DNA from: Pelomyxa schiedti
Lineage: Eukaryota > Protista > Evosea
Direction: 5' to 3'
NCBI GenBank assembly: GCA_020536535.1
Contig: JAHLWZ010000930.1
Coordinates: forward strand, 1-44,080
Length of the DNA stretch: 44,080 nt
Shown here: positions 11,647-42,065 of the stretch, one piece after another
Layout of the letters: each line of letters opens with the position of its first letter
Position numbering within the stretch: position 1 is the first letter of the stretch
Notes under the pieces: generated by a model
The model's input: the letters and a program-made list of their open reading frames with translations, nothing else
Database searches by the model: none
Told to the model about the DNA's origin: nothing
Program-made: the position numbers and the translations under genes

Positions 11647-11943
11647 TAAAAACACAAACAAAGGGCACAACGCAACGATTTGGGGAGCGCGACCTCTGCC
11701 TTGCCTCTCGCCGACATCTTATCAGATCGACCGGGCAATTAATGTCGCGCGTGCAACTGCAAATGAGCAAAAAAAGGAATGTAAAAACCTGCAAACCAAC
11801 GAATGAACATCAACAACTAAACGCGAAACCAAACATCAACTTGTGTGAGAACAAAGCCGAGAGAGACACAACCCAAACAACAACAAACACAAAAAAAAAG
11901 AAAAAAACAAACCCCACAAAGACAAAGACCTCGTGTTGTTGGG

Positions 11944-13750
11944 ATGAGGAAAGATCTGGTGTGTGGTGTTGTCCTCCTCTCTTGTTTGCTGTCGCTGTCT
12001 ATGTGTGAGCCGAACCCCCCTACTTGGCCCAAGAACGTATACATCTTCGATCCGGCCACCCCATCCACGACCCAGGCCGCCATCGACGCCGTCTTTGCGG
12101 AGAACGGCGGCAACTCTCCTCCCGACAATGGCCAGTGGAGCAACAGCCGATACGCGTTGATGTTCATGCCCGGCACCCACGCTGTCACCGTGGACGTTGG
12201 CTACTATACTTCCGTCATTGGATTGGGCAAGACGCCTCAGGAGACTACTCTTCAGACACTGAGGTGCCAGAACGGCGACTTTGACTACACCGTTGGTGCT
12301 CTAAACGCGAGTTTTTCCCTTTTTCCCCTCACCCTCTTTTTTTGTTGTTCATTTTATGAACCAACTCTAAACCTAGAACTTCTGGCGCTCTGCAGAAGGT
12401 TTTTCGACTCAGTCATACACCTTGTGGGCTGTATCTCAGGCCGCACCTATGCGACGAGTTGTGATCAGTGGCAATATGGACTTGTATCAGTATAACTACG
12501 GGTGCTGCGCTGGGTATGCTAGTGGCGGATACCTCGCGGATAGTATTATAAGTGGGACAGTCACTTCTGGCAGTCAACAGCAGTGGTTGACACGAAATAC
12601 CAACATGGGGAGCTGGAGCGGGAGTGTGTGGAACATGGTCTTTGTAGGTTGCGCGGGAGGCTTACCAACCGCCAATTGCGGGTCTCCCACTCCTTTCACT
12701 CTTGTTACTGCTACACCAGTTATTGCCGAGAAGCCATACATAACTCTTTACAGTGGAAAGTACAACCTGGTTATCCCGAAAGTAGAGTACAACAAAGTCG
12801 GTGTTACTTCCAACTATGACAATGCTAACACAGTCGGATTTGAAAATGTCTTTGTCGCCACTGAAACCGATACTGCCGCTACAATCAACGCCAAACTCGA
12901 TTCTGGCCTTCATGTCGTTCTGTCTCCAGGAAATTATAACCTTACGGAATCCATTGTTATCAACAACAAGAACACAGTGTTGTTGGGTATTGGCTTCCCT
13001 ACTCTGATTTCTACCAATGGCAACCCTTGCATCACCGTTGCCTCAGTTGATGGTGTTCGAGTAGCTGGCATTCTAGTTCAAGCTGGAAAAATTGAGGCCC
13101 CCGTACTTGTCAAGTGGGGTACAACTGATTACAGTGGAGATTCTACAAACCCTGGCTTTATTTATGACCTCTTTGTACGTGTTGGAGGTGACAACGATCC
13201 ATTTGAATACCAAGTCAGTGCGGATACTATGTTGGAAGTAAATTCTGGTAATGTAGTGATTGATAATACTTGGTTATGGCGTGCTGATCATTACGTTGGT
13301 GGCGGCATTGTTTACAACTCTATGAATCCAGCCAAGCACAGTGCAGTCATGAATGGCAACGATATAACCGCCTATGGTCTATTTGCTGAGCATACTCTTC
13401 AAGACATGGTTTTGTGGAATGGTGAGGGTGGAAGAACATACTTCTTCCAGTCAGAGTATCCCTATGACGTCACTCAGGCGAACTACGGCAGCCCTGGCTA
13501 CGCTGCTTATCGCGTGAACTCGACTGTTACTACTCACAATGCATGGGGTGTTGGTGTCTACTCCTACTTCCGAGACTACAGTGTAGTTGTCAACAGTGGA
13601 ATTGCTACACCCGGAACTTCCGGAATCTCCTTCACAAACTCCCTCACCGTGTTCCTCAATGGAATGGGCTCAATTCAACACGTAGTCAACAACAACGGTG
13701 ATGCCGTTTATGCCATTGGAATGCAAGAATGGCTGTGCTCTTCCAACTAA
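11944..13750 (+). CDS. Secreted GH55 exo-beta-1,3-glucanase (laminarinase), bacterial-type
   Basis: Signal peptide MRKDLVCGVVLLSCLLSLSMC. Motifs VGYYTSVIGLG, NFWRSAE, WAVSQAAPMRR, SGGYLADS, GSQQQW, WNMVFVG, WLWRADH, YGLFAEH and FFQSEYPYD match Streptomyces-type GH55 enzymes as I recall them. One intron, 12307-12376. Confidence 0.85.
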
Positions 13751-13882: not shown

Positions 13883-15870
13883 TCAAGAGGATCTGCCTGA
13901 ATTTTTCTTTGCTTTGGCTAACGTTGTGTCATCTTTGCCAAAAATGTCCTGATTTTGGTAATTGGTCTAGAATAAAGATAGTATCGAATCCAAACCTTCG
14001 ATTTCTTCTCCAAACTGGGGTTTTGTGCCTTCATGGCTGCTCTGAGGGGTGTTAGATTAAGTTCCCATAAAGGTATTGATTGTCATACATTGTGAGGGGG
14101 GTTGCTGGTTCTAGAGACACGCTTACATCAAAGGCTTCATCAGAAGTTCTAGCCTTGAATGACTCCAAGTAAGCTTGAATCTCTGCAACGGGCTTGAAAT
14201 TAGGTCCTACCACCTGCCATACTTTCAATCCCCTGAAGCATTTTAGTACTCACAAAGGAGTAGGCCTGCCATACTTGACAATAGAACTCATACTTCTCCA
14301 TTTGGCAAAGTTAACAAGTGATGTACCAGGAATGCAGTCAGTATTTCCGTCATTTGCGAAAGTAACATCCGTCAAAATCATCCCTAGACTGGTATGAATG
14401 TGTAATAAAGCAGTGCGAATTCCCACCTAGATGTGGTATGCACGGCGCAACAGCAGATTTTATTACATTTCTGTACGCCACAAAATTGGCAGATGGGTCA
14501 AGTAAAACGGAATATTTGTCAAATAATTCCCAGGACGGTTGCGGTAACAACTGGAAGGATGGTTAGGTAGGTAGTTTGTAATGATAGTATTTTAATTACC
14601 GCCCAAGATTTCTTCAGTCTGTGCACAGCAGAGTTTTGAAGACTGGAAACTATCTCGAGCAGACCATTGTAATTTCGGAGCTTGTAACAACACTAAAATA
14701 ATGTAAGCAATCTGGGTTCCGGATGAAGAACAAATTTACATCAGCGACTTGGATCAGCCGGTTAATAGCCAAGGCTCGATCTTTTTCACTTGGCAAATTA
14801 ATGACTTCAGATATGGCCCAAAGAGTTCTCTGGGGAAAATATTAGCTGTTTCAATGAATGTGGGCGGATCACTTTGTTTGACTCGTTTATCATGGCAGTT
14901 ATGTTTGGGGCAAGTCGACCCTTGACATTTGGCTTGTTCCAAGAATTTGTGATGAATTCTACTCACGTTACGATTTGCATACATATCTCAATTTGGAAAC
15001 CTTTTGGCTTGATTTTTTTCCATAAGTTCCATTCAATCAAAGATATCTGTCTTGCTAGCTCCTCTGGGTGGAGATCCAAAATAGTATTTATTGCCGAGGT
15101 TAGCAAAATCGGAGGTGGGCATTCGCCTGTTAAATTTACAGGGGAAGCCGTATTTAGCTGAACGAAAAGGCTTGCATGAGTCAATGAGACATTCTACTCA
15201 GTGTGCATACCAATTTTTTTAGAACAGCTCCGGCAATAGCGTTGTATGATGTGAAAAGGGTTAATGCCTCCGCGATTTTTTGTGAAAGTTCCATATTGTC
15301 AGACAGATCCTCATGTATACTCTTTAATACATTGATCACCCTAGGGCCAGTTAAAGGTGGAAGAGGTAAAAAAGAAAGACCTAGCCCTGACAGTTGTTCG
15401 TATTGTAGCGAACATGGATGGATCGAGAGTTTCAGGCATCCGGATAAAGAATCTTTATTACAATATAAGAAAATTCTGGCTGTAAAGCATGTACCGTGCG
15501 GTCAGCATATCAATAAGTTTGGATTCCTCCACAAAAGCTACGTAGGAGATAAAAAAGGACTGTGAAAAATCGGGATCTAGGTTGTGGTTAACAGCTAAAA
15601 ACATTGGAGGAGGCTAATACCACATTCCTCAGAATGTGTCAGATACTGAACAAGTTTAAAAACTGTGCCACCTTGTATTGTAAATGGCCGGGAGCCCGTA
15701 GAACTCTTTTTCATATGAGGAAAAAAAAGGAAAAGCTGGAAATGGTACCCCAGTATCTGAAAGAAACGTCCACCTGACATTACTGTTGGAGTCAGGCTCT
15801 TCAAAGTACTTGAAGTACTCCGCAAATTTGAGTAGAACTTCTGGTGGGATCTGTGAGGGGTCATCCACAT
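13883..15870 (-). other. RasGEF module (REM + CDC25 catalytic domain) of the fusion gene
   Basis: SOS-like REM start (FEEPDS...IQGGTVFKLVQYLT) and CDC25 conserved regions (ELARQISLIE; NYNGLLEIVSSL; PCIPHLG; VNFAKW). Stop at 13883-13885. Confidence 0.92.
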
Positions 15871-18800
15871 GCTTTGTTTTGTTTCCAGAAGGTTAGCAAT
15901 TTCAACTACGTGGGTGCTGTTATACCGGAACACTTTCTTGAGGGCAATTTGCCACAGCACCAAAGGAGTTATTTTGATAAAGAATAAGTAATTGTGGGGG
16001 ATTAAGTTCAGATTGCTGAAAAGCGAGTTGCGAATTCCTTCTTGGGGATGATGTAGGCGATATGTCCTGTGGTATGAGGCCTTCACCAATTGCAGATAGG
16101 GAACCCATTCGTGACTGATATCTACCTGAAGGCGGAACTTGAGGTATTGCGCCAAGTGGAATCCGGGCAACAGGACGGGATGTGGACGTGGATGTGGATG
16201 TGGATGCGGATGTGGATGTGGATGTCTTCAGAGGCAACGCTTTTGGCACTTTTACGGGCTCACTGCTACCCATAATGTTTGGCTGCGGAAAATCGCTGAT
16301 GCCGATATAGGTGAGAATTTTGTCACCTTTCTCTGGTTTTTTGTTTTTTTTTTTTAATGTGAGGGAAAAGACAGCAGGTGGCTGATGTGTACATACTGCA
16401 GCTGAGTAAAAATCGAGAACAGAGACCATTTTCAATTTGTTTTACACAAATGAACTGAGTGTTTGGAGGACAATTCTCCACATAAATAGGGGTGTAACAA
16501 CGAGGCATCATGGGAGGAATAACCGTAACAAGTACTTCAAGAGGTGGAATAATCTTAAAATGGAGTAGAATACTCATATAAGTATCATCCTTGGAAAATT
16601 CGTATGATGTTTGTGTTGTCCTAGGTGAAAAATTAAATGGGAAATATAGCTAAAAACACACTCGTCCACATTTGCTCCCACTAGGGCATCAAAGAATCGT
16701 TTATGTGGTTTCGCATAGAGGTCCAAGAATTGCTCAAATAATTGCCGCACACTGAGGTGGGTAGGGAAATGGCCAAATGTTTTTCCTTTGTCCATGGTCA
16801 TTAATTAAACGGGATCAAAGAAGGGGGATGCCTGTTGCTCCAAAGAGGTTAATCGAATGATTGGATATGCCAGGGAAATGGGTTGTAAGTAATTGGTCCA
16901 CTTCGTGGGCTGGGTTGCACGGTAATATATACAGATATTCCCCTGGTTGTGGGCTAAAAATAAATAAGGGATAATGAAAATTAATAAGTGTTCAAGGCAC
17001 CATAAAGTTGTTGAAAGTTGTACACAAAAGAATCTTTTATTTGGACCACTGAGATGCTTGTACTCCACAATACTTTTGATGGCAGAAAGTTGATACCCTC
17101 TTGGGCAAACTCTTAGTGAGGGCTTCCCTGCTTGTAAATGTCAAATTGATTGACTAGTAACGCTTTTGACCTGAAATTCCTGGTGTGATAACAACCTGAG
17201 GTTCTGGCAGTTCAGTGCGTTGTAAAGTTGCTTCTAATTCCTTCAACCAGCGAGTGAATGGTCGTTGTCCTCTGCAAGAATGAGTGACCAGGAAAAGGAG
17301 GAACCAGGTACTTGTCAGGCCGTTCTACATCGATTTTAACGACGGGAATCATTGGAGAAGCTCCAAGTCGCCTGAACATATCGTTTATCTGGTCTGCAAA
17401 CACACAGAACTACGTGAGGTGAGCTTGACTTAGAAGTCAGGAGGGGGTCTATCTTCACCTTATCATAGACACTTGAACCAAAGCCAAGAACTGAAAACCT
17501 TGTTCCTGAGAGCAGATGGTTGAAAGAGTCAAGTGGCAATGCACATAAGTAGTCCCAAAATTTTTGTGCATTGTAGGGCATGTTTCGATTGTTTTCACTT
17601 TGCCACGTTGAAGTCAGAAGGATGAGTGTCGTGCAATGTCCAAGTGCCTCGATGGGAAAGTGGTCCATGGAATGAATTGAAACACAACCTTCACCAAGTG
17701 ATTTTTCTAGAACTGCATGCACTTTATAAGCATAGGAGGCAGTAAAACCTCCCTGTGACCCATACATGATGGCAACGTTGCCAACAGAGCCAATAAAATC
17801 ATCACCCCCCAAGCGCACACCCTTACGCAGAGCGAGTGGAGGGGGGGTATATACAGGGGGATAATACTCAAGAAGCTTTCTAGATTTCTTCGATGCAACT
17901 CCACTGAGTTCCGTCTCTTGGAATTGTTGCTGTCGGAAGTATGGAGAGGGTTCTGAAGAATTTGCTGACACTTTATAGACTTGTGACCGTCGTTTAGCTT
18001 GAATGCATGGATCACTGCTATGAGGTTGGCCTCCACCCCCCAAACAACCCCCAGGACAAGCCATGCATTCGACAAAATGCTTTCGTACTGTAGTTTTCCC
18101 GGCTCGTTGAACATCTTCCAGACCTTGTGAAGAGAGAAAATCTTGTATTTTCCGTGCTCCACTGATAATTACAACTTCTAGTTGCCTGTTTGAAGAAGGT
18201 TTCGTGGGTGAAATGTCAATTACAGTTTCAATCCAAGAGTCAGTCTTTATAACTTGGCGACATTGTTCAAAGATCTTAACATCTGACTTTTCCAACTGTA
18301 GTTCATGTAATTTAGTACAGGAAATCCAAAGAATTGCGTACTTTTTCCTGTGTCAAACAGGAGAATGCGACTCTAAGTGCTGCCTCCTTGAATGCAGTTA
18401 GAAAAGCGGTGAGAAAAGGTAGGACAAACTGTCACACCACCACTTGCTGAGAACAAGTTTCCTCCTCCACTTGAGACAGCAAATGGTTCATCAAATGTAG
18501 CTTTTCCTTTCCCGGAGAAAGTACTCCATGCAGTGGGGTCAAGCCGTGCTTTTAGAAGCTGTGCCATCTCCCGGACTGTTAACACAATATCCACATCTTT
18601 GTGCCCACTGTTTCATGAGTCAGAAGAAAGATTCATGGAAGTTACTTGCCATGGGTCACGAAGTTCTGGTTTGTTAATCTCTTCCTTTTTGGCAATGCAG
18701 GGCATAACAGCAACAACGAAGTAGCGATTACGAGGGATATTATTATGCTTCATCCAGCTGCGGATCATTGCCCCAAGCATCATCATTGGTGACCTGCACT

Positions 18801-20362
18801 TGGAAACTAGAGCTCGCAGGTGAGGATATTTCTAGAAAACAATTGAGAAAGTGATAATACACGTAAAAGTTACATGTTCCACGAGTCTAACCCACCCAGG
18901 GCAGCATGATGTAAATAGAGGAAAGGGTCCCCCAGCCTTCACGCGTTTCAGCAACTCTATAGCCTCCAATGTAGCACATGTATCGGCAGCAAATGTAGTG
19001 TCAAAGACATATTCGAATCCAATTGCATGTGCTGCTTCAACAATACGCCACATGTCTTGGTTATCATTAATATGGGAATCTCCTTCCCCCATAAGTTCAC
19101 AGATTGAGATTCTGCTGGTAGGTGCAGTTTGAAGTATGAGTGTCTTTCTATTTGGAGAAGACTTCTCTGTGTCTAGTTCCTGGAGAACAGTATTAACATC
19201 ATTTCTTTCAGATACAGCACCCGTTGGACAAACTGCAGCACACTGCCCACATGTAATGCAGCTTGTTGCGTGAAGAGGAAGATTTTTCTCAAAGGCGATT
19301 GGTGCAAGAGGATTGTGAGTATTCAGCTGAAGGACATTCATGTTCTGAACCTCTGAACATACACGGACACAACGTGTGCATAGACAACACAGACTCTGGT
19401 TCCTAACTAATGCATATTGTTGTTGAACTTCAGGAACAGTAGATGTTCTCTGTACCGAAAAAAATGAGCACCATGAATGAACAAGATTGTACGAACCTTG
19501 GTGTATGCAAGGATATCCTCAATTTCAGGAGTGCGAGGTGATATTGATTCCAGGGTCCGTGTACCCAAAAATTCTTGTAGATTAGTGGTACCTCTGTAAT
19601 ATACTTCAGGTGCATTTGTAGTTACAACCATTCCATCTTCCACTAATGTTTTGCAAGCCTTCACGAACTCCACGACTGTTCTAACATCTGATCCATAAAA
19701 ATACGAAGTAGTACTTTTCCCAGAGCCAGATAAACTGCTGCGGTCACCATCAGACCCGTTGTAGGAAGAAGATGAAGAAGATGAAGAAGCACCAGCACTT
19801 CCACTAGGACCTCCTATGGAATTACTTCGGCGCAAACCCAAATTGGGTGATAGGGGTTGTGAAGGGCTTGGTGAAACAGTTGCAGGTGTAGGTGGAGCTG
19901 AAATCATAATGGAAGGCGATGGCGATGAAAATGGTGAGTGTGGTATAATTGGAGAAGTAATGGGAGGAGTTCTAGTTGCCGAATGTGAGAAAATGCCGGA
20001 ATTGGCGGGACTTTTGTTTACAACTCCTTGACTTCCAGATGAAACGATGCGCTCCACCTGAACGACACAAAGGCCACATTTTCCCGTAGATGGCAGTGAC
20101 GGGTGGTGGCACAGCGTAGGAACATGAACATTCACTTCGTAACAGGCTCGTAAGATCGTCCATTCTCTTGGCGCTTGTAATACTTTCCCATTTATTGTAA
20201 CAGTAACCTCAGGTGCCACACTCTCCTTTACATTTTGTTATTGATTGTGAAGTACGAGGAGTACATCTTTCAAAAAAAAAAAAGTGTCAACTTGTAGCAT
20301 TTGACATCTGTCAAATGCCCCAAAATTTTGTGGGTGCCACGGCCCGTGGGTGTGCTTGCCAT
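13883..20362 (-). CDS. [FeFe]-hydrogenase-flavodoxin-FAD-binding domain-RasGEF (REM+CDC25) fusion protein
   Basis: Phase-compatible exon chain traced from the 20219 ORF into the REM domain. [2Fe-2S]: LCHHPSLPSTGKCGLC...KAC. 2x[4Fe-4S]: CCLCTRCVRVC and CITCGQCAAVCP. H-cluster: P1 FTSCCPGW, P2 MPCIAKKEE, P3 ECMACPGGCLGGGGQP. Flavodoxin: IMYGSQGGFT, TSTWQ, FSVLGFGSSVYDKFC. FAD domain: PGEYLYILPCNP, PRCYT, GLCSRFLLSCKKGDKI..SDFP. REM: FEEPDS..IQGGTVFKLVQYLT..DPDFSQSFFISY. CDC25: LDLHPEELARQISLIE, LRNYNGLLEIVSSLQNSAVHRLKKSW, PCIPHLG, ILTDVTFANDGN, VNFAKW. The first exon (ATG 20362, MASTPTG) is tentative. Confidence 0.8.
16178..16225 (-). repeat. Imperfect (GGATGT)n hexamer repeat encoding a (TS)n linker
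   Basis: Visible tandem ggatgt units on the plus strand; translates on minus as TSTSTSASTSTSTSTS between the FAD domain and the RasGEF. Confidence 0.85.
16285..20219 (-). other. Hydrogenase-flavodoxin-FAD module of the fusion gene (group A-like [FeFe]-hydrogenase with CysJ-like tail)
   Basis: All three H-cluster motifs are intact, with F-cluster Cys motifs upstream and flavodoxin plus CPR-type FAD-barrel motifs downstream. This part is secure whether or not the fusion call holds. Confidence 0.93.
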
Positions 20363-20837
20363 TTTATAAAGGGGAAAAAAGGAGGGAGGTTGGGGAAGCA
20401 CTTTTTGAGGTCTTAGGTACTGAATCTCGGGTAAGCTTGTTTCTGTCTTGGCCTTCATTTGCAATTTGGCGTACCACTCCCCTCTTACTTGTTTTTGAGT
20501 TATTAAGTTGTTCTCAGGGATAGTCGAAGACGAAGACAAAAGTTCAAGGTACATGCATCCTCGGGAGCGCGGAATTGCTGTTTTTGGGTTTATACCTGTT
20601 CCTGGAAGGGGCTAACATCCACCAAATCTCCACAGCACCATCAACCACTTCTGTTTCCTTCCTTTTGTTTGTTCGATATTTCTGCAACGGGAAAAAAGCC
20701 CAGTCAGGGTTGGGCGGGGTCGACAAAACAAAAGTTTAGAGAATACACAACAGAGGAGGTAGTTTTATTGTATGGGTTTTTGTAGAGGTAATTACATCTG
20801 AGGTGGCGGTGCCCAACCAAGAGCTGCCGGCAGCACC

Positions 20838-21786
20838 CTAAAAACCAAAGCCAAGTGAACCTGTGAGAGACCTTCTCTTCAATTTATCAAGGGCGGCGGC
20901 TGTGTCATACTCGTGAAGCAGCGTTTCTATGGTTGGCTGGTCAAGTATGGGGTACTCTGTTGCGAGCAGGTTGGCCAGGTGCTTTGGGTCCGGGCTACCC
21001 TTGAGCTCCTCCAGGTCAATGAGCAAATCGCCACAGGCATAGGACATGAGGCGGGAGATAGCGGCATTTTTCTCAAAACTGCTCATCCACTCCTCCATTG
21101 ACAGAGTTCCGTTGTGATCGGTATCCGCCTTGAAAGCCAACTCGGCAAATTGATCCGCATTCACGTGGACTGCTGTAGCAATCATCTTACTGATCATCTT
21201 GACTGTGAGGGATTAGTTGGCAACCTGTAAGAAAAGGAGTACTGTATACTCACAAGATATTTTACTGCCTGGATGTTTATGGATGTATGACTTGAGCTGC
21301 ACCTTGATAAGACTAATGCAAGATGTCATTGACACCCGGAGCGCCTGTATGAACTCCACCTTGGTTATTTGTCCGTCGCCGTTCAGGTCACATGCCGTGA
21401 ATAGCATTTTGGCGCGTTCTGTCGGGTCACCACTTGCCAAAATACTTAGTCCACTAAGGAATTCGCGTTTTGAAACCATTCCTACAGTTAAAGTTGGTGA
21501 TAATATAGGCCGCAGGAGAGAGTAAAAGGAAACCGTTGTGGTCGCGGTCAAACAGCCAGAACAGCTCATCGGCAAATCCTTTGGTTGACAAGAAATCGAC
21601 GTCGGGCATATTTGCGCTTATCGCCTCTATGAAGCGCTTGAACTTTGAGATCTTTAATTCCTCCTTGTGAGGTGGCCAGTACGACATAATGAACTTGACG
21701 TGGTCAACGGTCAAATTGAGCTCCGAGGCCAACGACCCCACTTCAGAGTCCGATGTCAAGTGTGGTTTCGACGCATCCGCACCCAT
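20838..21786 (-). CDS. N-myristoylated EF-hand calcium sensor (NCS/calcineurin-B-like) with C-terminal CUE-like helical extension
   Basis: MGADASK fits the MGxxxS myristoylation motif. EF loops DRDHNG|MVSKRE, DLNGDGQITKVE and DTDHNGTLSMEE; typical FLSGLSILASGDPTERAKMLF segment; three exons. Confidence 0.85.
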
Positions 21787-34133: not shown

Positions 34134-37100
34134 CCCCCGAGGCGGCGGACGACCTCGGCTGGTGCTGGTGCCCCGGCAGCCCCTCGCGGGTCTCGGCGTA
34201 CGAGTGGGTCGACGTCGTGCCCGCCGCCCGCGCCTCCTCCGTCCTGCTCGCCGCCACGTCCTCGACCCCGCCGGCCCCTCCTTCCGCCCCCGGCGCCTCG
34301 CCTGGCGGCGCACTCTCGCCGTCGCTGTCTCTGCAGTCGCTGGCCGCGCTGTCCCTGCCCTCCCTGTCGTCCATAACGCTGGCTCTGCCTTCGCTGTCGG
34401 GCCTGCAGCTCCGCCCTTCCTCGCCCTCGATCACCGCTTCGTCTGTTCGGCCGAGCTCGCCGGCTATAAGAACCTCGACGCCGCTGCCTGGCGGTTCGTG
34501 CGACTCGAGGCTGTATTTCGTCTATACCAGGCAGGTGGGTGGTTCCGTCCTGAAGGCGTGCGCGCCGCCGGCTGCCATCCCACAAGTTGGTGACAACTCA
34601 GGGGCCAGGCCGCTTTTAATGCAGTGGGTCGAGGCGCCCTCGGACGGACCGGCACAAAACAGGCTTGATTCGGAGACTATTCCCCTTTCTAGTGTTGGAA
34701 TGGACCACATCACATCGATTTCTCAATTCGTGGAAGAGCGTGATGGCGCAGCCCCCTCGACTCGTATCGTTTTAGCTGGGTGTGTGCCTTCCAACCCCGT
34801 TTTCACCACAAAGTTGATAATGAGTTTTTAGCACTAGTACTCAAGGTTTAACTTCAGCAGTACTGCTATCTTTTGATAGTACTGGTCTTTACATCGACCA
34901 TCAAGTTGAACTTCAGTTTGGGTATGCGAATCAAGAACAGCAACAGCTTCATCCTGCAGTAGTAGATACCCATTGCCAACAATGGTGTGCGTTTTTCTTG
35001 CTTGACTGTGGCGTTATTCATGCAGTCAATGTAAAAAACGGCAAGCCTTTTGCTAGCATTTCCATTACAGCTCCACAGTTTGATGAAGCTGTGCACACAA
35101 TAAAAGTATCAAGTGATCTGTTGACACTTGTTGCTGAAACAGGGCCAAGAAATAAGTTCTTTATTGTAGACTTGGATGAATTCTTTCATTCAAGTTCCAC
35201 ACTGCAAGGCGCAAAGGAAACAGCTCCCAGTGAAGAAAACTCTGAAAGGAATTCATTACAAGAGACTAATGATGAGAGCAAAACATCAATAGGCAATGAC
35301 AATGAGCAGGGTGAATCGAATGAGGAATCTCTAGACCTTCCACAGTACCCTGGAATGGACGATTGTCACGAATTTCTTCACTGGTACGAGTGGATGACAT
35401 CGTCCACACCCCCTGCCCCCTCTTCATTGCCTCGCCCTCAGATTCCAGCAGTTACTCCAATTTCAGGGCAGAGTGTGGTGGCTTTATTGATGTCCACTTC
35501 ACTAGTTTGTGAAACTCCCTCCAAGGGGAGTGGGGTAAGAGAAATGTGCCTCCACAACTTGGAACACAAGGTGGAGACAAAATTTTCAATCGGTCATTCT
35601 GCATTACCATGCTTCTCTCACAGCAGAGGCTACCTATACTTCGATCTTTTAAAAGGAGGCCTCTTCCAGGTAGTTCCAGGCATAACGCAGAAAGAGCTTA
35701 TTGAAAGCCTTATGTTGGAGTCCCCCCAAATAGTTGGTTGGTATTCTGTCAACACCAATATTTTTACCAAAACCTACCTCAATAGAGCATCTGTGTCTTA
35801 TAAATGACTGGGATGTCAAACAGCTGAATCTTACAGCTCTGAGGCTTGGAATTAAATCTCACCAAATAGAGACCATCGAATCTGCATTGCAAAAAATGGA
35901 GCAACCTGAGCAACAACTACTGGGTGCACGCATTTTATTGGAAGAATTGAGACTACTTAAATCAGCTCCCTGTTCCAAGGACGTGCCCATAAGATTCTTG
36001 TATGCCTGTTTAGAATTTGCTATGCGAGCACTGGATTCAACAGTAGGGAAGCAGCCAATACGCGAGGGTATGGAGCAACAACCACGTGAAGTGTTTATTG
36101 ATCTTTTATTACTGACGCGAGAATTGATGTCAACATTTTCCGGGTCAAAATCTGATGCACCCCTACCTCAAACCACTGTTAGCCCACTTTCAGTATCACC
36201 CCCAAATAGTTCCACCCTTTTCTGGTCACATTGTACTGAGATCAATGGTTGGGATAACCTGGAAGATACTGAGCTTTTGCAACTTGGGCTCTGTACTGGG
36301 ACTCTTCCTACAGTAATGGGATTTTTGCAGTGTTCCCGCAGTACAAGAGACAACGAAAATCCTCCCAAATACACATTGCAGTGGGTAAACCAAAATGGCC
36401 TTTGTTTAGTATACAAAGTGCTCTGTGAGGGGAAGCAGATGGAGCTCGCCTCCACCATGCTCTCCAACCTAGGTATTGAGAATGTGTTTTCTGCTTTGGC
36501 GGAAATAGCCACCCATACAACCAGGCCGTGTCTTCGATCAGAGCTGGTTAAATACATTCGCCAACATTCCAGTTTTACTTCAGTGCCACTGAACAGCTGC
36601 ACACTTGACTATATGAAGCAGTTGGAAGATACTTACAAAGAAGTGTTTTTCTACAATGAATACGACCGTGTTGCATCACAACCTGCTTCTGTAAGTGCTG
36701 GTGATGATGAAGAAGAGGATGACTTCTTTGAAGATAAACAATTTATTTGTGGCGATGTTTCCGATTTACCGCAATCTGTACAACACCGATACAATGTCCA
36801 ACAGACTATCCTTGCTGTTCCCGAGCTTTACAAAAACCGGAATAAAATATGTATACAGCCACCAACACAATGCCTGGATTCAGAACCAAATTCAGATACT
36901 GTAAAAGGGTATCTGCACACATCCTTGTGTTGGGTGTCCCAATGGGACCAAGAGACAAGAGATCGTGTTATTCTTGATAGAGGGGGGGATTTATCCACAT
37001 TAGCGATTTCTCCAAATAATACCTTCGCATACCTTCTTGATCATACTGATTTGAATGGGATTGTATCATGGCTGCACTCAACATGTTCCTCTTCACCAAT

Positions 37101-40100
37101 ACAGCACAGACTTGATCAACTTACACCTGAGTCGAGGAAGGCCATAAAATTGTTATTGGAAGAAAATGGCATCAAGATGAACACGCTAAAAAAACGTGCC
37201 TCTTGGGTGATCCGTGATCAAATTTTGAACCACTTAGTTGTGTTCAAGAATTTCTTTATAAAAAGAGAGGCTAAGTGCTTCTATAAGCTAATCAAGTCTT
37301 TTGATAAAGTTCCTAGAGATAAGTCTTTTACAACTGTTAAGAGACGCTTAGCATCTTGTGGAATGCTATTTTCACCTCATTCCATGTACCCACAGATATT
37401 TCATCACAATTTTCTTTCTTTTCTTGCTGCACATAATTCTTTCTCTGTGGCTCAAGCCTATATTGCTTTCTTTGCCAGCAACGGGCAAGAAATAAGCCTC
37501 TCTGACACTCTCAACCCATGGATCAAGCTCTTTTTACTCTGCCAAAAACCGCCAAATAATCTTGCTCAAGTGGCAGCTCTCAATGCTTGCCTGGTGTCAC
37601 CGAAACACTGTGATTTTGTGGATATCCAAGCTTTGTTGACAATGGTATCAGAAAACAAGGCTGACATATCCAACCTGCTTGTTTTGGCACTTTCCCAACA
37701 TGCACCCATTCAAACTCTTCCTTTGGTTCCTGAATCACCAACTCTTGACCGCGCTATCCACGAAATTAACGCTGGAACCCCAGCAGGAGAGAGCAAGTGT
37801 TCTCCGACCTTGTGGGAGCCCGATCTGCAGAGCAGCAATGGCGACCAAAAGCTTTCTACCCTCCTGGGTGAACCAGATTTTTTCCGTCGATTTTCTGCTT
37901 TGAAAAGACAAGGTGAAAGTGGGCTCTCATTTATTGACAACGAACTCTCCATGATGGCAATGAAATACGAAGTCGATTTTTGCTATTATCTAAGCAAGGG
38001 ACACCCAGTTAGGGCCCTTTCTGCTTCCAAACCACCTTTTCATCAAGGTGGTACTGAAGGATGTATATTTGTTAAACAATTTGCTCTCTCCCATCCAGAG
38101 AATTTTCGGTTAGTTGCTGCATGCGCTTGTTATCTAGAACTTTTAGGCCATGACAGTTTGCCCTTGCGTGTTGATGCACAGTCAAAAGTTATCACTCTTA
38201 TGCACGCAAACGAGAAGGAACATTCGAAAATCGATGACATGTTTGCTACTTGTGCTGCTGACCCCAAAAATCCCCAAGCACAACAGCTACTGAGCTATTT
38301 AGAAGACGCTGTTGACGCACTTAAATTTGACAATGACGATCCCACAAGACTTCTTCCGCATCTATTTTGTATGGCACACGGTATTCCGCCATCTTTAAAG
38401 TTGCTGATATCACTTGCGGAGAGTGGAGATGTGGTTGCTTTTCTTTACACTGCCCAACTTCAGCACATTCCCGTAGATACCCTGCTATCAGTTATCACCA
38501 GCTCTTGGGGAAAGACTCATTTAACATCGCGAGAACATGTTCTGCTTACACTGAGACACTTCGATCCAACCATGCCTCCTGCAGAAACTCTTGTAACACC
38601 TCCTATTTCGGAAAGGAATATTATTTGGAATGCGTACAGATATAGCACGCAACATTTTGACAATGACAGCACTGCACCCAGACCATATTCCTCTCCCCTT
38701 CTCGTTCTTGCACTGAATCAGCATGCAGACCTGTCTGATCCACGCACCTCAACCATGCTATTCTTAGAGTATCTTCATGCCATTTACCCCACACAAATTT
38801 CTGCACCAGACTACTCTGAGACAGACGACCACCTGGCTTCCAAGATGGCCCAAGTGGTGGATGAGTTATTGCAAAAACAGAAGTTCATTGCTCTAGAGAT
38901 GGCTTTCATGCTCTTCGATGCTCTTAACCCTCTTCTTCATTTAGTTGTTTTTTGTAAGTTGTTGCAACAGTCACGATTTCCAGAAGCACTTTCAGAGCTT
39001 GTACTTTTCTCCAACAACCAAGACAAACTCCCCCAGTGCATTTCAGCCACAGGAGTCAGTTGTGTCGAATTGTTGATCCACCAGTTCCTTGAACAAACAG
39101 ACTTCTTTTCACTGGGAAAACTTCTGCAGATATGCTGTGAAGCACATTTCGCGGCTGGAACCAATGTTGGTAACCGAGTCATGCAGTTATATTCAATGTT
39201 TACACTTCTTCAAAAAACTGAGCTCCCCATGTACCTGATTGCCAGCACTCCAGATATGATCCTTGAAGAGTTAAAGTCTCGTGCTTTATTTGATGAAGCT
39301 ATCCAATTTGCCACAGAACAAGGCCTAAATATACAAAGTGTAATCTTTGCAGAGGCGATTCACATGCTGATTCAGCATCACTCCGGCTGTTTGTGGAAGT
39401 TGGTGGCTGAAAGAATGAAACTATGGAAGCGCATGCACGTTTATTTCCTGCAGCACAATGCCAATGGAGAACAAGTAGCTCGCTTTTTCCTCTTACTTGC
39501 GCACTATGACCCTCTATCTATACCTGGGGGTTGTGGCGAGTTCGTTCTGCCAGAAGGTATCATTAACCAGATACCAAATGATGCTACAGAACAAGTGGAA
39601 CTTATGTCATTAGCGTACGCATGGCTGGTAGGTAAGCAGAATGAAGCCATTGTTGTACCTCCTCCCACAACTGATGTTACCAGCTTTGAGAATTGTCGTC
39701 AGGGTGAAAATCTCTTGTGTAACAATCCCGCTTTCATGCGTGAATTGGAAACAAGAACCCTACTGTTGAGCACATGTAGCAAAGTTGGTTTAGAACTGAC
39801 CTCTGTAAATGAAAATGCACGAGGCGATGACCAAGTCCCAGTTCTGGATGAAGTTGTGGTCCATTTGCTTAATGCTGCGAAATACGACAGTGCCAAAGAC
39901 ATTGTACGAAAATTCAACCACTCATGCTTTGATTTGTTGGTGGCAGAGGCCATGCTTTGCCTTGCAGAAGGAAAGATTGAGTGGGATTCTGTTTCGACAT
40001 CTATCTCCCCAGAAGTTATTTCTGCACTTAATGCTCGTTTGGGGGAGGAGACTGTTACGCAGTTCATTCAGGATCGTAACGTTTTATCACTATTATCTTC

Positions 40101-42065
40101 CCTGGTGCCTCTCGTTCCGAGGTCTCGACAGTGCTGCTGTAATATAGTCATTCTTTTCAGTTCTTCAGTGGAACTAAGTTCGAGCTTCAGTGACTTGAGC
40201 AAGGTGCCCAAAGATAAACTTCTAAGGTTGTTGCTTGACCGTGGTACATGCAAATCAATTCAATTGGGCTCTGAACTTGTACAAAACTCTTCGGAACTTT
40301 CTTCTAATCTTGTAGCGCTCGTTATTGCCAGCTATTTCCTGGACTGGACCACAGAGCAGCTAGAGCTGCCTTCAGGCACAAGAAAAAATATCCTTTTTGA
40401 ACAATTTGTCCTATTTAATCTCCGTGTTCACTTTAACAAAGTGCAGCTTTTTCTAGGGCTGCATTTCTGCAAATTGTTGCTCTCTGCCCAAGACCAAGCA
40501 AGATAGCTGACTCACTGTGTCGTACTATTCACTTCGAGGGGACCACCAAAGGAGAGCTTAAAAGGACTGCTAGTTCCAGCTCTGGGAGTGGATCACCCAG
40601 ACCCGGCGCTTCCACAACAACCATTTCTACTGTGACTACTACAGCACTTTCCAGTGGACCCACCTCTTTCACAATACAGCGAGGAGAGGTGGAATGGGAC
40701 CCAGAAACCGAAATTGAGGTTGCTATTGCTGCATATCTTTGCTATGAAGCAGGATCTTCAAGAACAGGGTGCCACAAGATTCTTGATTTCTTTCACTCTC
40801 AAGTGTCTAAACTGGCAGACCAGAAGCTCTACCGTCTCCTTTTCCGCATACTAACAGGTGCGTGAAATCTTTCTAATCTTTTGCCTACATCTGTTAGGAA
40901 CCAGAGCCTATCAAGATTTGCAGTACATTTTTGATACCCTGTTTGATGCTGCCCAACTTGATCTCTTATTGAAAAGGGATGTACTTGATCCTACAAGTGA
41001 TGATGATGGGCTCCCCTTTGCCATAGTTTCTTATCTGAAACAGAGGCGGTAGTACCCTGATTTTTTCGATTACTCTCCACTGAGCAACCTCTAGGCCTAC
41101 TGATACCGCTACTCTTACACTAGTATGCCGTAGATACAGCCTGCATCAAGATTTTGCCCAATTAATGGAAGAGCAAGCAACCGATATCATCGAGGGTCTT
41201 TTCCCTAAAAAAGATGAAAACGCATTGCCCCCAACATCAGGCTCAGCCAGAACCGTATTTGAGAAATCTTTGGTATCAGCAATGGAATTGCTCCTGCAGT
41301 GTGCAGGTGTGTTTACCTTTTCCCTCTTTCTCCACTCATTTTATGCCTTCAGGGCACTTTTCTGCTGAACGTTCCTTCCTGCATACCACAGCAGTTCTAA
41401 ACCGGGCAGCATTGGTATCTTTACAAATGAAAAGAATGGACATCAGAATCCTTGCCCTACGGTGAACAACACTCGTGTCACCCTTTCTTGGTAGCATTCT
41501 CACTTCCACTCAGACCTGATCAAGCCAGGCAGCTTATGGTGTTTCAGGCCACAGTCTCTGATGCTCTTGCTTTGGCAAACGGATACAGTCTCAGTGAACC
41601 AAAGGAATGGGCCGCATTGTTATACCATCAGGCCGTTGTTAATGAAAACCTATCCTTCCTGTATGAACTGTCCAAATACACAAGTATGTACCAAACATTC
41701 CCCACAATCACCACACAATCAACCTTAATTGATTGATCAACCCACACTTATACCTAAATAAAAAATCCATTGCAGATATTTCCAGTGGGACATACCAGGA
41801 AGTAGCCAACATATTCATGAGCGACCCACAGAAGGTCTCCCACGTCCGGCAGTTCAAGCAATTCGTCTCGACGTGCGAGGACTACTTCCTGCAGTATGAC
41901 ATCGCCATGCAGGTCGGCATGCATGACATGGCGGAGTCGCTCAAGGCCGAGATACCAGGACTCAAGTACTTGAAGGCCTGTGCTCCCACGTCACCTGAAG
42001 CGGCAACATCGTCAGCATCAGGCTCAACCACAACAACTGCAACAGCAACAACCCAAAAGACTTGA
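33656..42065 (+). CDS. SPG11: Spatacsin (SPG11; AP-5 coat partner)
   Basis: Very large protein whose segments LCLINDWDVKQLNLTALRLGIKSHQIETI, FCYYLSKGHP, ERMKLWKRMH, EIEVAIAAYLCY, LLFRILTG|TRAYQDLQYIFDTL..LDLLLKR, AALVSLQM and DALALANGYSL..EWAALLYHQAV resemble spatacsin conserved blocks. The low-complexity GC-rich first exon is less certain. Confidence 0.85.
34100..34132 (+). repeat. (CAG)11 microsatellite encoding polyQ in the SPG11 N-terminal region
   Basis: Uninterrupted CAG run preceded by CAG-CCG units (QPQPQ11). Confidence 0.9.

What the first reader, a model, noticed from the sequence alone, without database searches (positions are those of the whole stretch)
13883..20362. [FeFe]-hydrogenase-flavoprotein fused to a RasGEF: candidate eukaryotic H2/redox sensor driving Ras signalling
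Seen: what looks like two genes in the ORF track joins through a canonical 64-nt intron (16333-16396, GTATGT...CAG), giving ...ENGLCSRFLLSC-K-KGDKILTYIGISDFPQP-NIMGSSEP.... The first downstream residues (GDKI..SDFP) complete the CPR/CysJ FAD barrel, and the same exon runs without a stop into the linker; two further phase-compatible introns lead into the REM domain. Known: hydrogenase-CysJ/flavodoxin fusions occur in anaerobic protists, and sensory group C [FeFe]-hydrogenases linked to signalling domains occur in bacteria. I know of no hydrogenase joined to a small-GTPase GEF. Inference: H2 level or ferredoxin redox state, read through the H-cluster, FMN and FAD, gates nucleotide exchange on a Ras/Rap protein. 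That would suit an H2-producing anaerobe that depends on H2-consuming partners.
Basis: partly seen in the sequence, partly recalled or inferred. Interest (0 to 1): 0.96.

Follow-up and report, generated by a model that had tools for sequence, protein, structure and literature searches.

The report
Hydrogenase fused to Ras activator
An oxygen-avoiding amoeba that depends on hydrogen-eating microbes has one gene joining a hydrogen-converting enzyme to a Ras-switch activator, which suggests an undescribed way for a eukaryotic cell to sense hydrogen or redox state, though no experiment has tested it.

Summary
The window is Pelomyxa schiedti. The fusion is real at DNA level: one 28-exon, stop-free frame (20458-13883, minus strand, 1738 aa) encoding [2Fe-2S], 2x[4Fe-4S], H-domain, flavodoxin, FAD barrel, linker, REM and CDC25. 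No RNA crosses the junction. A paralogue on another contig (GenBank KAH3758981.1, one 1766-aa protein) keeps the layout and all 26 of its intron phases despite saturated silent sites (dN 0.07-0.19, dS about 2). The junction intron is also shared with two kinase-tailed paralogues. The NAD(P)H domain is gone. The gene belongs to a long-branched Archamoebae clade in which the NAD-less hydrogenase-flavin module carries swappable outputs: RasGEF, kinase (intron-free 1692-aa ORFs), or an Ig/WD-like tail. H-cluster residues are prototypical group A, not sensory group C. Best reading: a dead-end redox chain reports H2 or ferredoxin potential to a Ras GEF (0.6). Coupling is unshown: the linker is disordered and the Sos-F929 position is His. 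Corrections: the start is 20458, not 20362; a second, GC-AG intron is also needed. The gene is published only as 'mitochondrial hydrogenase' Pelo_14332, from a truncated model. I found no paper describing the fusion. This scan had already noted the paralogue and the kinase versions.

The parts
13883..20458 (-). Whole gene: 28 exons, 27 introns (40-64 nt, one of 176 nt), 1738 codons, no internal stop; = Pelo_14332 / KAH3744271.1 (published model starts late, at 19907)
20402..20458 (-). Exon 1 with the clade's N-terminal YL(R/P)xQK motif, followed by a phase-0 intron 20401-20226
19497..20225 (-). [2Fe-2S] domain split by a Ser/Pro-rich insertion; the His-ligated [4Fe-4S] motif that follows in CpI is absent
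19228..19389 (-). Two [4Fe-4S] ferredoxin motifs
17850..19146 (-). H-domain: L1 TSCCPGW (18912-18892), L2 MPCxAKKEE (18705-18679), L3 ECMACPGGC (from 18070); CpI C299, M353, K358, M497, E279, E282, R286, S319 equivalents kept; small-subunit part diverged. The lower boundary is approximate
18608..18649 (-). GC-AG intron (GCAAGT); agrees with the published Pelo_14332 sequence and with paralogue intron positions
17272..17770 (-). Flavodoxin (FMN) domain: YGSQGG P-loop, clade-specific TSTW loop, GFGSSVY; intron 17458-17410 spliced in RNA
16286..17271 (-). Connecting domain and FAD beta-barrel of CPR/CysJ/NOS type (RCYT, GLCS); no NAD(P)H domain follows; introns 17170-17131 and 16661-16621 spliced in RNA
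16786..16831 (-). Required GC-AG intron (weak donor GCATCC) that removes stops in all three frames; GT-AG at the same site and phase in three paralogues
16333..16396 (-). Junction intron (64 nt, phase 1), inside the FAD barrel; shared with the C721, C730 and C1164 paralogues; not covered by RNA
15926..16332 (-). Exon 14: last barrel strand (GDKI..SDFP, 16327-16286), then a Ser/Thr/Pro-rich linker (32% identity to the paralogue, pLDDT < 50). The evolutionary seam, where the NAD domain was replaced, lies in or just after this exon
15211..15871 (-). REM (RasGEF_N) domain, GGTVFKLV at 15672-15649
14089..15157 (-). CDC25 catalytic domain: HPEELARQ, RLKKSW, helical hairpin PCIPHL-G-MILTDVTFANDGN (His at the Sos F929 position)
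13883..14041 (-). C-terminal basic tail (two exons), shared with the P. schiedti ankyrin-RasGEF subfamily; stop TGA 13885-13883

Best explanation
One cytosolic polypeptide that works as a one-component redox/H2 sensor with a Ras-family GEF output. Shown: the domain order, loss of the NAD(P)H domain, retention of all H-cluster ligands and proton-transfer residues, purifying selection on both halves, and exchange of output domains within one clade. Inferred step 1: the H-cluster is matured and equilibrates with H2/H+, or with ferredoxin through the [2Fe-2S]/[4Fe-4S] wire. Inferred step 2: with no NAD(P)H domain the flavin arm is a dead end, so its redox level follows that potential rather than turning over. 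By the Nernst equation 1-10 Pa H2 at pH 7 is about -270 to -300 mV, near the FMN semiquinone/hydroquinone couple of diflavin reductases (my recollection, not measured here). Inferred step 3: the redox-linked open/closed swing known for CPR/NOS FMN domains releases or occludes the tethered REM-CDC25 unit, as N-terminal domains do in Sos, Epac and RasGRP. Inferred step 4: a Ras/Rap GTPase is loaded with GTP and adjusts feeding, motility or growth to H2 build-up, the variable that the essential methanogen symbiont controls.
For: Stop-free model. Paralogue annotated as one protein with the same Pfam order; 26/26 intron phases shared. dN 0.07-0.19 against dS 1.6 to saturated in every folded domain, against dN 0.46-0.70 in the insert and linker. 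NAD-less clade monophyletic, SH-aLRT 100, long stem; RasGEF type sister to the P. schiedti kinase pair. Kinase outputs in P. schiedti (two), Mastigamoeba balamuthi (two) and metagenome contigs, including uninterrupted 1692- and 1307-codon ORFs. Every clade member long enough to test ends its flavin module at the barrel with no GLGTGxAP. The genome keeps two separate NAD-bearing hydrogenases for metabolism. Both halves fold confidently like CpI, NDOR1/CysJ/NOS and Cdc25/Sos. The host needs low H2 and dies when methanogenesis is blocked (PMC10579272).
Against: No RNA across the junction, and no spliced RNA in the GEF half. No biochemical data. The paralogue model shows an ~100-residue disordered linker and no confident sensor-GEF packing (pTM 0.53; the alignment has almost no paired rows, so this is weak). 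The active site lacks the substitutions typical of sensory groups C/D. The FAD site is altered. The Sos-F929 position is His in both copies (Tyr in most of the closest GEFs), and F929A cripples Sos1 (PMC3762125). The HydEFG maturases are predicted organellar (PMC8887013), so cytosolic maturation is open.
Confidence: 0.6

Rival explanations
1. Tethering without redox gating: an active group A hydrogenase (ferredoxin- or flavodoxin-linked H2 production or uptake) is carried to membranes or near symbionts by the GEF/Ras interaction, or signalling controls the enzyme rather than the reverse.
For: Fully prototypical catalytic residues; long flexible linker with no predicted interface; a basic C-terminal tail that could bind membranes (inference).
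Against: Three unrelated outputs on the same module, two of them classic signal transducers; loss of the electron donor domain; clade-specific remodelling of the FMN loop, the FAD site and the small-subunit plug; separate canonical enzymes exist.
Confidence: 0.2
2. A sensor, but of O2, oxidant stress or Fe-S/H-cluster loading rather than of H2: the uncovered flavin or the O2-labile clusters oxidise, or the protein stays without the [2Fe] subcluster, and that state switches the GEF.
For: Loss of the NAD domain removes the residue that shields the flavin in diflavin reductases (established knowledge); maturases are predicted to be organellar (PMC8887013); the organism lives in hypoxic sediment (PMC10579272).
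Against: Residues that matter only for the [2Fe] subcluster and proton transfer (C299, M353, K358, M497, E279, E282, R286, S319) are kept in both RasGEF copies under strong selection; other protists lacking maturases make active enzymes (PMC11216029).
Confidence: 0.13
3. Two genes, a mainly truncated isoform, a pseudogene or a misassembly: a NAD-less hydrogenase ending near 16325 and a separate RasGEF starting at ATG 16273.
For: No RNA across the junction; intron retention gives a stop at 16325; an ATTAAA at 16358 and an A-run lie in the intron; RasGEFs are very numerous in this genome; the model needs a weak GC donor.
Against: One DNA contig spans the stretch and a second run tiles it (these may be the assembly's source). 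The paralogue on another contig has the same layout. ATG 16273 is not conserved, while the 20 codons before it evolve as coding sequence and supply the last barrel strand. Only about 50 nt would separate stop and start. The intron is shared with kinase paralogues, and relatives show the equivalent join in intron-free ORFs.
Confidence: 0.06

Closest known systems
CysJ-fused 'long' [FeFe]-hydrogenases of anaerobic protists (Trichomonas, Stygiella, Pygsuia; P. schiedti Pelo_7496/Pelo_7270)
   Same: N-terminal Fe-S wire without the His-ligated cluster, group A H-domain, flavodoxin and FAD barrel in the same order; about 30% identity.
   Different: NAD(P)H domain replaced by a linker plus REM-CDC25; RLYSIAS changed to RCYTP; ~11-residue loop before GLC deleted; altered FMN loop; separate long-branched clade. 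PMC10579272 describes the long P. schiedti enzymes as CysJ fusions with an NADH pocket; that holds for only two of six.
Bacterial group C (TmHydS) and D (TamHydS) putative sensory [FeFe]-hydrogenases
   Same: Logic: an H-domain linked to signal transduction.
   Different: No PAS domain, no Cx2Cx4Cx16C motif; C299, M353, M497 and the proton path are retained; group A ancestry; flavin relay; eukaryotic small-GTPase output. A convergent design, not a member.
REM-CDC25 RasGEFs (Cdc25, Sos1, RasGRF, Epac, RasGRP)
   Same: Complete REM + CDC25 fold (Z 32 to Cdc25, 30 to Sos1); N-terminal putative regulatory domains.
   Different: The regulatory region is a metalloenzyme-flavoprotein; His at the F929 position; closest kin are P. 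schiedti ankyrin-RasGEFs (50-53%).
Archamoebae hydrogenase-flavin-kinase fusions (KAH3758890.1; M. balamuthi m51a1_g2097, m51a1_g192)
   Same: Same NAD-less sensor module, shared introns, same clade.
   Different: Ig-like + Ser/Thr/Tyr-type kinase output instead of RasGEF; also undescribed in the papers I could search.

Membership tests
Group A [FeFe]-hydrogenase | H-cluster motifs L1 TSCCPxW, L2 MPCxxKxxE, L3 ExMACxxGCxxGGGQP | tested here: met
Group A [FeFe]-hydrogenase | Proton path C299, E279, S319, E282, R286 and framing Met353/Met497 (CpI numbering) | tested here: met
Group A [FeFe]-hydrogenase | H-cluster occupancy and H2 turnover | not testable with these tools
   needs maturation and assay
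CysJ-fused NAD(P)H-linked hydrogenase | Flavodoxin + FAD barrel after the H-domain | tested here: met
CysJ-fused NAD(P)H-linked hydrogenase | C-terminal NAD(P)H-binding domain (GxGTGxAP, PF00175) | tested here: not met
CysJ-fused NAD(P)H-linked hydrogenase | Intact FAD-binding motifs (RxYS, loop before GLC/T) | tested here: inconclusive
   R, Y and GLCS kept; Ser to Thr; ~11-residue loop deleted
Group C/D sensory [FeFe]-hydrogenase | C299 and proton path lost; M353/M497 replaced (PMC8163306) | tested here: not met
Group C/D sensory [FeFe]-hydrogenase | C-terminal Cx2Cx4Cx16C motif; PAS domain (group C) | tested here: not met
RasGEF (REM-CDC25) | REM and CDC25 domains, complete and colinear | tested here: met
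   (whole-domain scores from the paralogue P0001, 75-80% identical)
RasGEF (REM-CDC25) | Helical-hairpin residues needed for exchange | tested here: inconclusive
   LTDxxFxxDGN kept as in Cdc25-type GEFs; aromatic F929 position is His; Sos numbering from memory
RasGEF (REM-CDC25) | Exchange activity and substrate (Ras, Rap, Ral) | not testable with these tools
   many Ras-superfamily genes in the genome; substrate not predictable
MRO-targeted hydrogenase (published label) | N-terminal targeting sequence | tested here: inconclusive
   the published '+?' call used a model starting at residue 126; the true N-terminus resembles paralogues predicted non-mitochondrial; no predictor was run

The most novel reading that the evidence does not exclude
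A eukaryotic H2 receptor: an active H-cluster sets the redox state of a dead-end flavin arm that directly gates Ras nucleotide exchange. It would be the RasGEF member of an Archamoebae-wide family of H2 sensors with interchangeable outputs, letting the host read the performance of its methanogen symbiont.
Probability: 0.4. Interest if true: 0.95.

Novelty: new variant of a known kind. Interest (0 to 1): 0.84.

Why it matters
To my knowledge no direct H2 sensor is known in eukaryotes, and no small-GTPase GEF is known to be fused to a hydrogenase; the paper searches found none. Sensory [FeFe]-hydrogenases are only 'putative' even in bacteria, where the output is usually on another polypeptide. 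Here sensor and output are one chain, and the output has a standard real-time assay, so whether an H-cluster can drive signalling becomes directly testable. It would give a mechanism for how a host monitors H2-consuming endosymbionts. It also corrects the metabolic map of P. schiedti: four of six 'long' hydrogenases cannot bind NADH the CysJ way, and the 'mitochondrial long hydrogenase' rests on a truncated gene model.

Tried and rejected
RNA check: one laying of four runs on 14301-20300 gave spliced contigs for three introns only. Pieces in the GEF half (run X4) retain introns, so they are DNA or pre-mRNA and prove nothing. Start at 20362 with intron 20305-20226: open in frame but rejected for 20458 on motif and intron homology. 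A stop at 14053 (my first model): rejected, since two more introns reproduce the conserved tail. GT-AG or AT-AC alternatives for 16831-16786: no GT-AG exists; AT-AC options do not match the paralogue site. A PPxLLIL motif at the end of exon 14 resembles the ankyrin-RasGEFs by eye but was not significant against shuffles, so it is not used as evidence. The published full-length Pelo_14332 protein did not appear in the three homologue searches and the supplement shows only its first ~400 residues, so I do not know where that model ends. No hydrogenase-RasGEF fusion outside P. schiedti was found (length limits apply). The NAD labels in the tree came from too strict a pattern for the outgroups; one search is the valid test. 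Both trees are quick searches without bootstrap. The bacterial promoter scan is irrelevant to a eukaryote. Two key papers (PubMed 34762819; PMC4379409, M. balamuthi hydrogenases) were not held.
Full report
SOURCE. The assembly has 52,367,397 bases in 5337 contigs, matching the Pelomyxa schiedti genome (52.4 Mb, 5337 scaffolds, 7.4 introns per gene, 1.59% GC-AG; PMC8887013). The gene is Pelo_14332 (KAH3744271.1, '[FeFe]-hydrogenase, mitochondrial'). The first ~400 residues printed in that paper's Table S2 match exons 2-5, starting at an internal Met at 19907, residue 126 of my model.

1. OBSERVATION. Reading three frames I placed 25 introns before seeing any homologue and obtained a stop-free frame. 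Homology then corrected the first donor and added two 3' introns: 28 exons, ATG 20458 to TGA 13883, 1738 aa. Twenty-six of the 27 introns are 40-64 nt. Exon-by-exon Pfam gives Fer2_4 (1.7e-14), Fer4, Fe_hyd_lg_C in four colinear pieces, Flavodoxin_1 (2e-9), two weak FAD_binding_1 pieces, RasGEF_N (weak) and five colinear RasGEF pieces (best 1e-9). A second weak point exists: stops in all frames near 16815-16800 need the GC-AG intron 16831-16786; no GT-AG alternative works. RNA contigs splice 17458-17410, 17170-17131 and 16661-16621, so the hydrogenase-flavin half is expressed and spliced, but nothing covers 16396-16333 and the GEF-half pieces are unspliced. One DNA contig spans the stretch; it may be the assembly's source. 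All four runs come from one study.

2. THE JOIN IS OLD AND SELECTED. Contig C721 carries a paralogue matching 25 of the 26 exons queried, in order, from [2Fe-2S] to CDC25. It is deposited as a single 1766-aa protein, KAH3758981.1, named only 'Fe-hydrogenase 2', with Pfam hits Fe_hyd_lg_C 5e-61, Flavodoxin 2e-15, FAD_binding_1 5e-9, RasGEF_N 3e-14, RasGEF 6e-54. That record is itself a prediction, but all 26 of its introns match mine in context and phase, 23 of them placed independently. Exon-wise codon comparison gives pS 0.66-0.86 (dS about 1.6 to saturated) and dN 0.07-0.19 in all folded domains, against 0.46 and 0.70 in the Ser/Pro insert and linker. The junction intron and the GC-AG intron both occur at the same site and phase, as GT-AG, in C721, C730 and C1164. 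The 20 codons before ATG 16273 are conserved in 11 relatives with a third-position bias, and the ATG is not. In the structure model they form the last strand of the flavin barrel. The junction intron therefore lies inside a domain, and the evolutionary seam lies downstream, in the linker of exon 14.

3. THE FAMILY. Searches recover a set of proteins with the same module but other tails. Kinase: P. schiedti KAH3758890.1 and Pelo_16670, whose kinase lies beyond a 100-N gap; M. balamuthi m51a1_g2097 and m51a1_g192; JGI and Logan contigs. An Ig-like plus WD-like tail: two Mastigella eilhardi transcripts (no Pfam hit; Atlas lead 0.79 only). P0160 and P0163 are uninterrupted ORFs of 1692 and 1307 codons on contigs barely longer than the ORF, and the P0009 contig ends in a poly-A run. 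The equivalent join therefore exists without any splicing assumption. Trees (quick IQ-TREE, SH-aLRT only) make these one clade (100, stem 0.7-1.2 changes per site), with the RasGEF type sister to the P. schiedti kinase pair (99-100) and nested among kinase types. The simplest history: a CysJ-fused group A enzyme lost its NAD domain and gained a kinase in early Archamoebae; in Pelomyxa one copy swapped the kinase for a REM-CDC25 unit from the local ankyrin-RasGEF subfamily (50-53% identity), then duplicated. That order rests on midpoint or outgroup rooting and was not tested formally. P. schiedti keeps two canonical NAD-bearing enzymes, on C594 and C579.

4. ANATOMY. H-cluster ligands, the proton path and both framing methionines are those of CpI, unlike TmHydS and TamHydS (PMC8163306). 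The His-ligated cluster is absent, as in other CysJ fusions. Clade marks: GGVM to GGVT in most members, LLHT to LLEY-like, STYG-EGE to STW plus a longer loop at the FMN site, RLYSIAS to RxY[TA]P-like, and an ~11-residue deletion before GLC. All complete NAD-bearing relatives continue into GLGTGxAP or a close variant after the barrel; no clade member does. Models of the paralogue fold well (mean pLDDT 80): CpI-like H-domain, flavodoxin Z 24 to NDOR1, FAD module Z 16 to nNOS/CPR, REM-CDC25 Z 32 to Cdc25 and 30 to Sos1. About 100 residues between barrel and REM have pLDDT < 50 and pTM is 0.53, so no fixed interface is predicted. The hairpin has His where Sos1 has F929, a position whose mutation cripples Sos1 (PMC3762125); numbering is from memory.

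5. MECHANISM. I commit to a one-component sensor (0.6). A catalytically competent H-domain wired to a flavin arm with no NAD(P)H sink takes on the ambient H2 or ferredoxin potential, and a redox-linked rearrangement of the FMN domain relieves or imposes autoinhibition of the tethered GEF. The architecture, NAD loss, selection and output swapping are shown; cofactor loading, conformational coupling, direction and substrate are inferred. Within that reading H2 itself as the signal is about two thirds, giving 0.4 for the most novel case. Rivals: tethering or reverse regulation of an ordinary hydrogenase (0.2), O2 or cluster-loading sensor (0.13), two genes or artefact (0.06). Context fits but does not prove: H2 removal by the methanogen is thought essential, and BES kills the amoeba (PMC10579272).

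6. KNOWN SYSTEMS AND NOVELTY. It descends from CysJ-fused hydrogenases (PMC4989108) but fails their NAD-domain test. It may work like group C sensors but fails their residue and PAS tests. It passes the fold test for RasGEFs, with one doubtful residue. The two P. schiedti papers do not mention a RasGEF, and library searches found no description; subscription papers are mostly not covered. I rate it a new variant of a known kind (signal-linked hydrogenase, independently built); it would be categorically new if direct gating of Ras by H2 is shown. Earlier notes of this scan describe the C721 twin and the kinase versions. I had found these from primary data first and do not count the notes as evidence.

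LIMITS. Whole-protein scans, trees and structure models use the deposited paralogue P0001 as a stand-in (71-90% identical per folded domain).

Noticed in passing
window 19907 (published start of Pelo_14332): The 'mitochondrial' label (graded '+?') was predicted from a model missing the first 125 residues, including half of the [2Fe-2S] domain; it is probably an artefact.
   Followed up: partly
G000:C1164, L027 7200-8650: The 'partial' hydrogenase Pelo_16670 continues beyond a 100-N gap into an Ig-like + kinase region like Pelo_9301, so P. schiedti has two kinase and two RasGEF versions.
   Followed up: partly
P0009 (Logan SRR33036527), P0163 (JGI): Two kinase-type members replace the M353 equivalent (Ser; Phe); Ser is the change typical of group D sensors. 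Possible convergent tuning.
   Followed up: no
P0002 (Cyanophora paradoxa, 4122 aa): Gene model with seven H-domains, three flavodoxins and one FAD domain; tandem array or merged model.
   Followed up: no
P0170, P0175 (Anaeramoeba): WD40-hydrogenase-flavodoxin fusions, one with filamin repeats, outside the Archamoebae clade: a second case of a hydrogenase joined to interaction domains.
   Followed up: no
window 16333-16360; C721 72422-72466: The junction intron ends in an A-run rather than a pyrimidine tract in both RasGEF paralogues; here it includes ATTAAA at 16358. Could allow a short isoform or internal oligo-dT priming.
   Followed up: partly
window 15341-15380: The only intron not shared with the C721 paralogue (gain or loss after duplication).
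   Followed up: no
window 20838-21786 (-): EF-hand protein gene directly upstream on the same strand, ending about 380 nt before the start.
   Followed up: no
window 11845-13750 (+): Convergent neighbour with a signal-peptide-like start and no Pfam hit; from memory it resembles bacterial GH55 beta-1,3-glucanases, a possible lateral transfer.
   Followed up: no
window 35734-40506 (+): 1590-codon open frame with no Pfam hit, unusual in so intron-rich a genome; from memory spatacsin-like.
   Followed up: no
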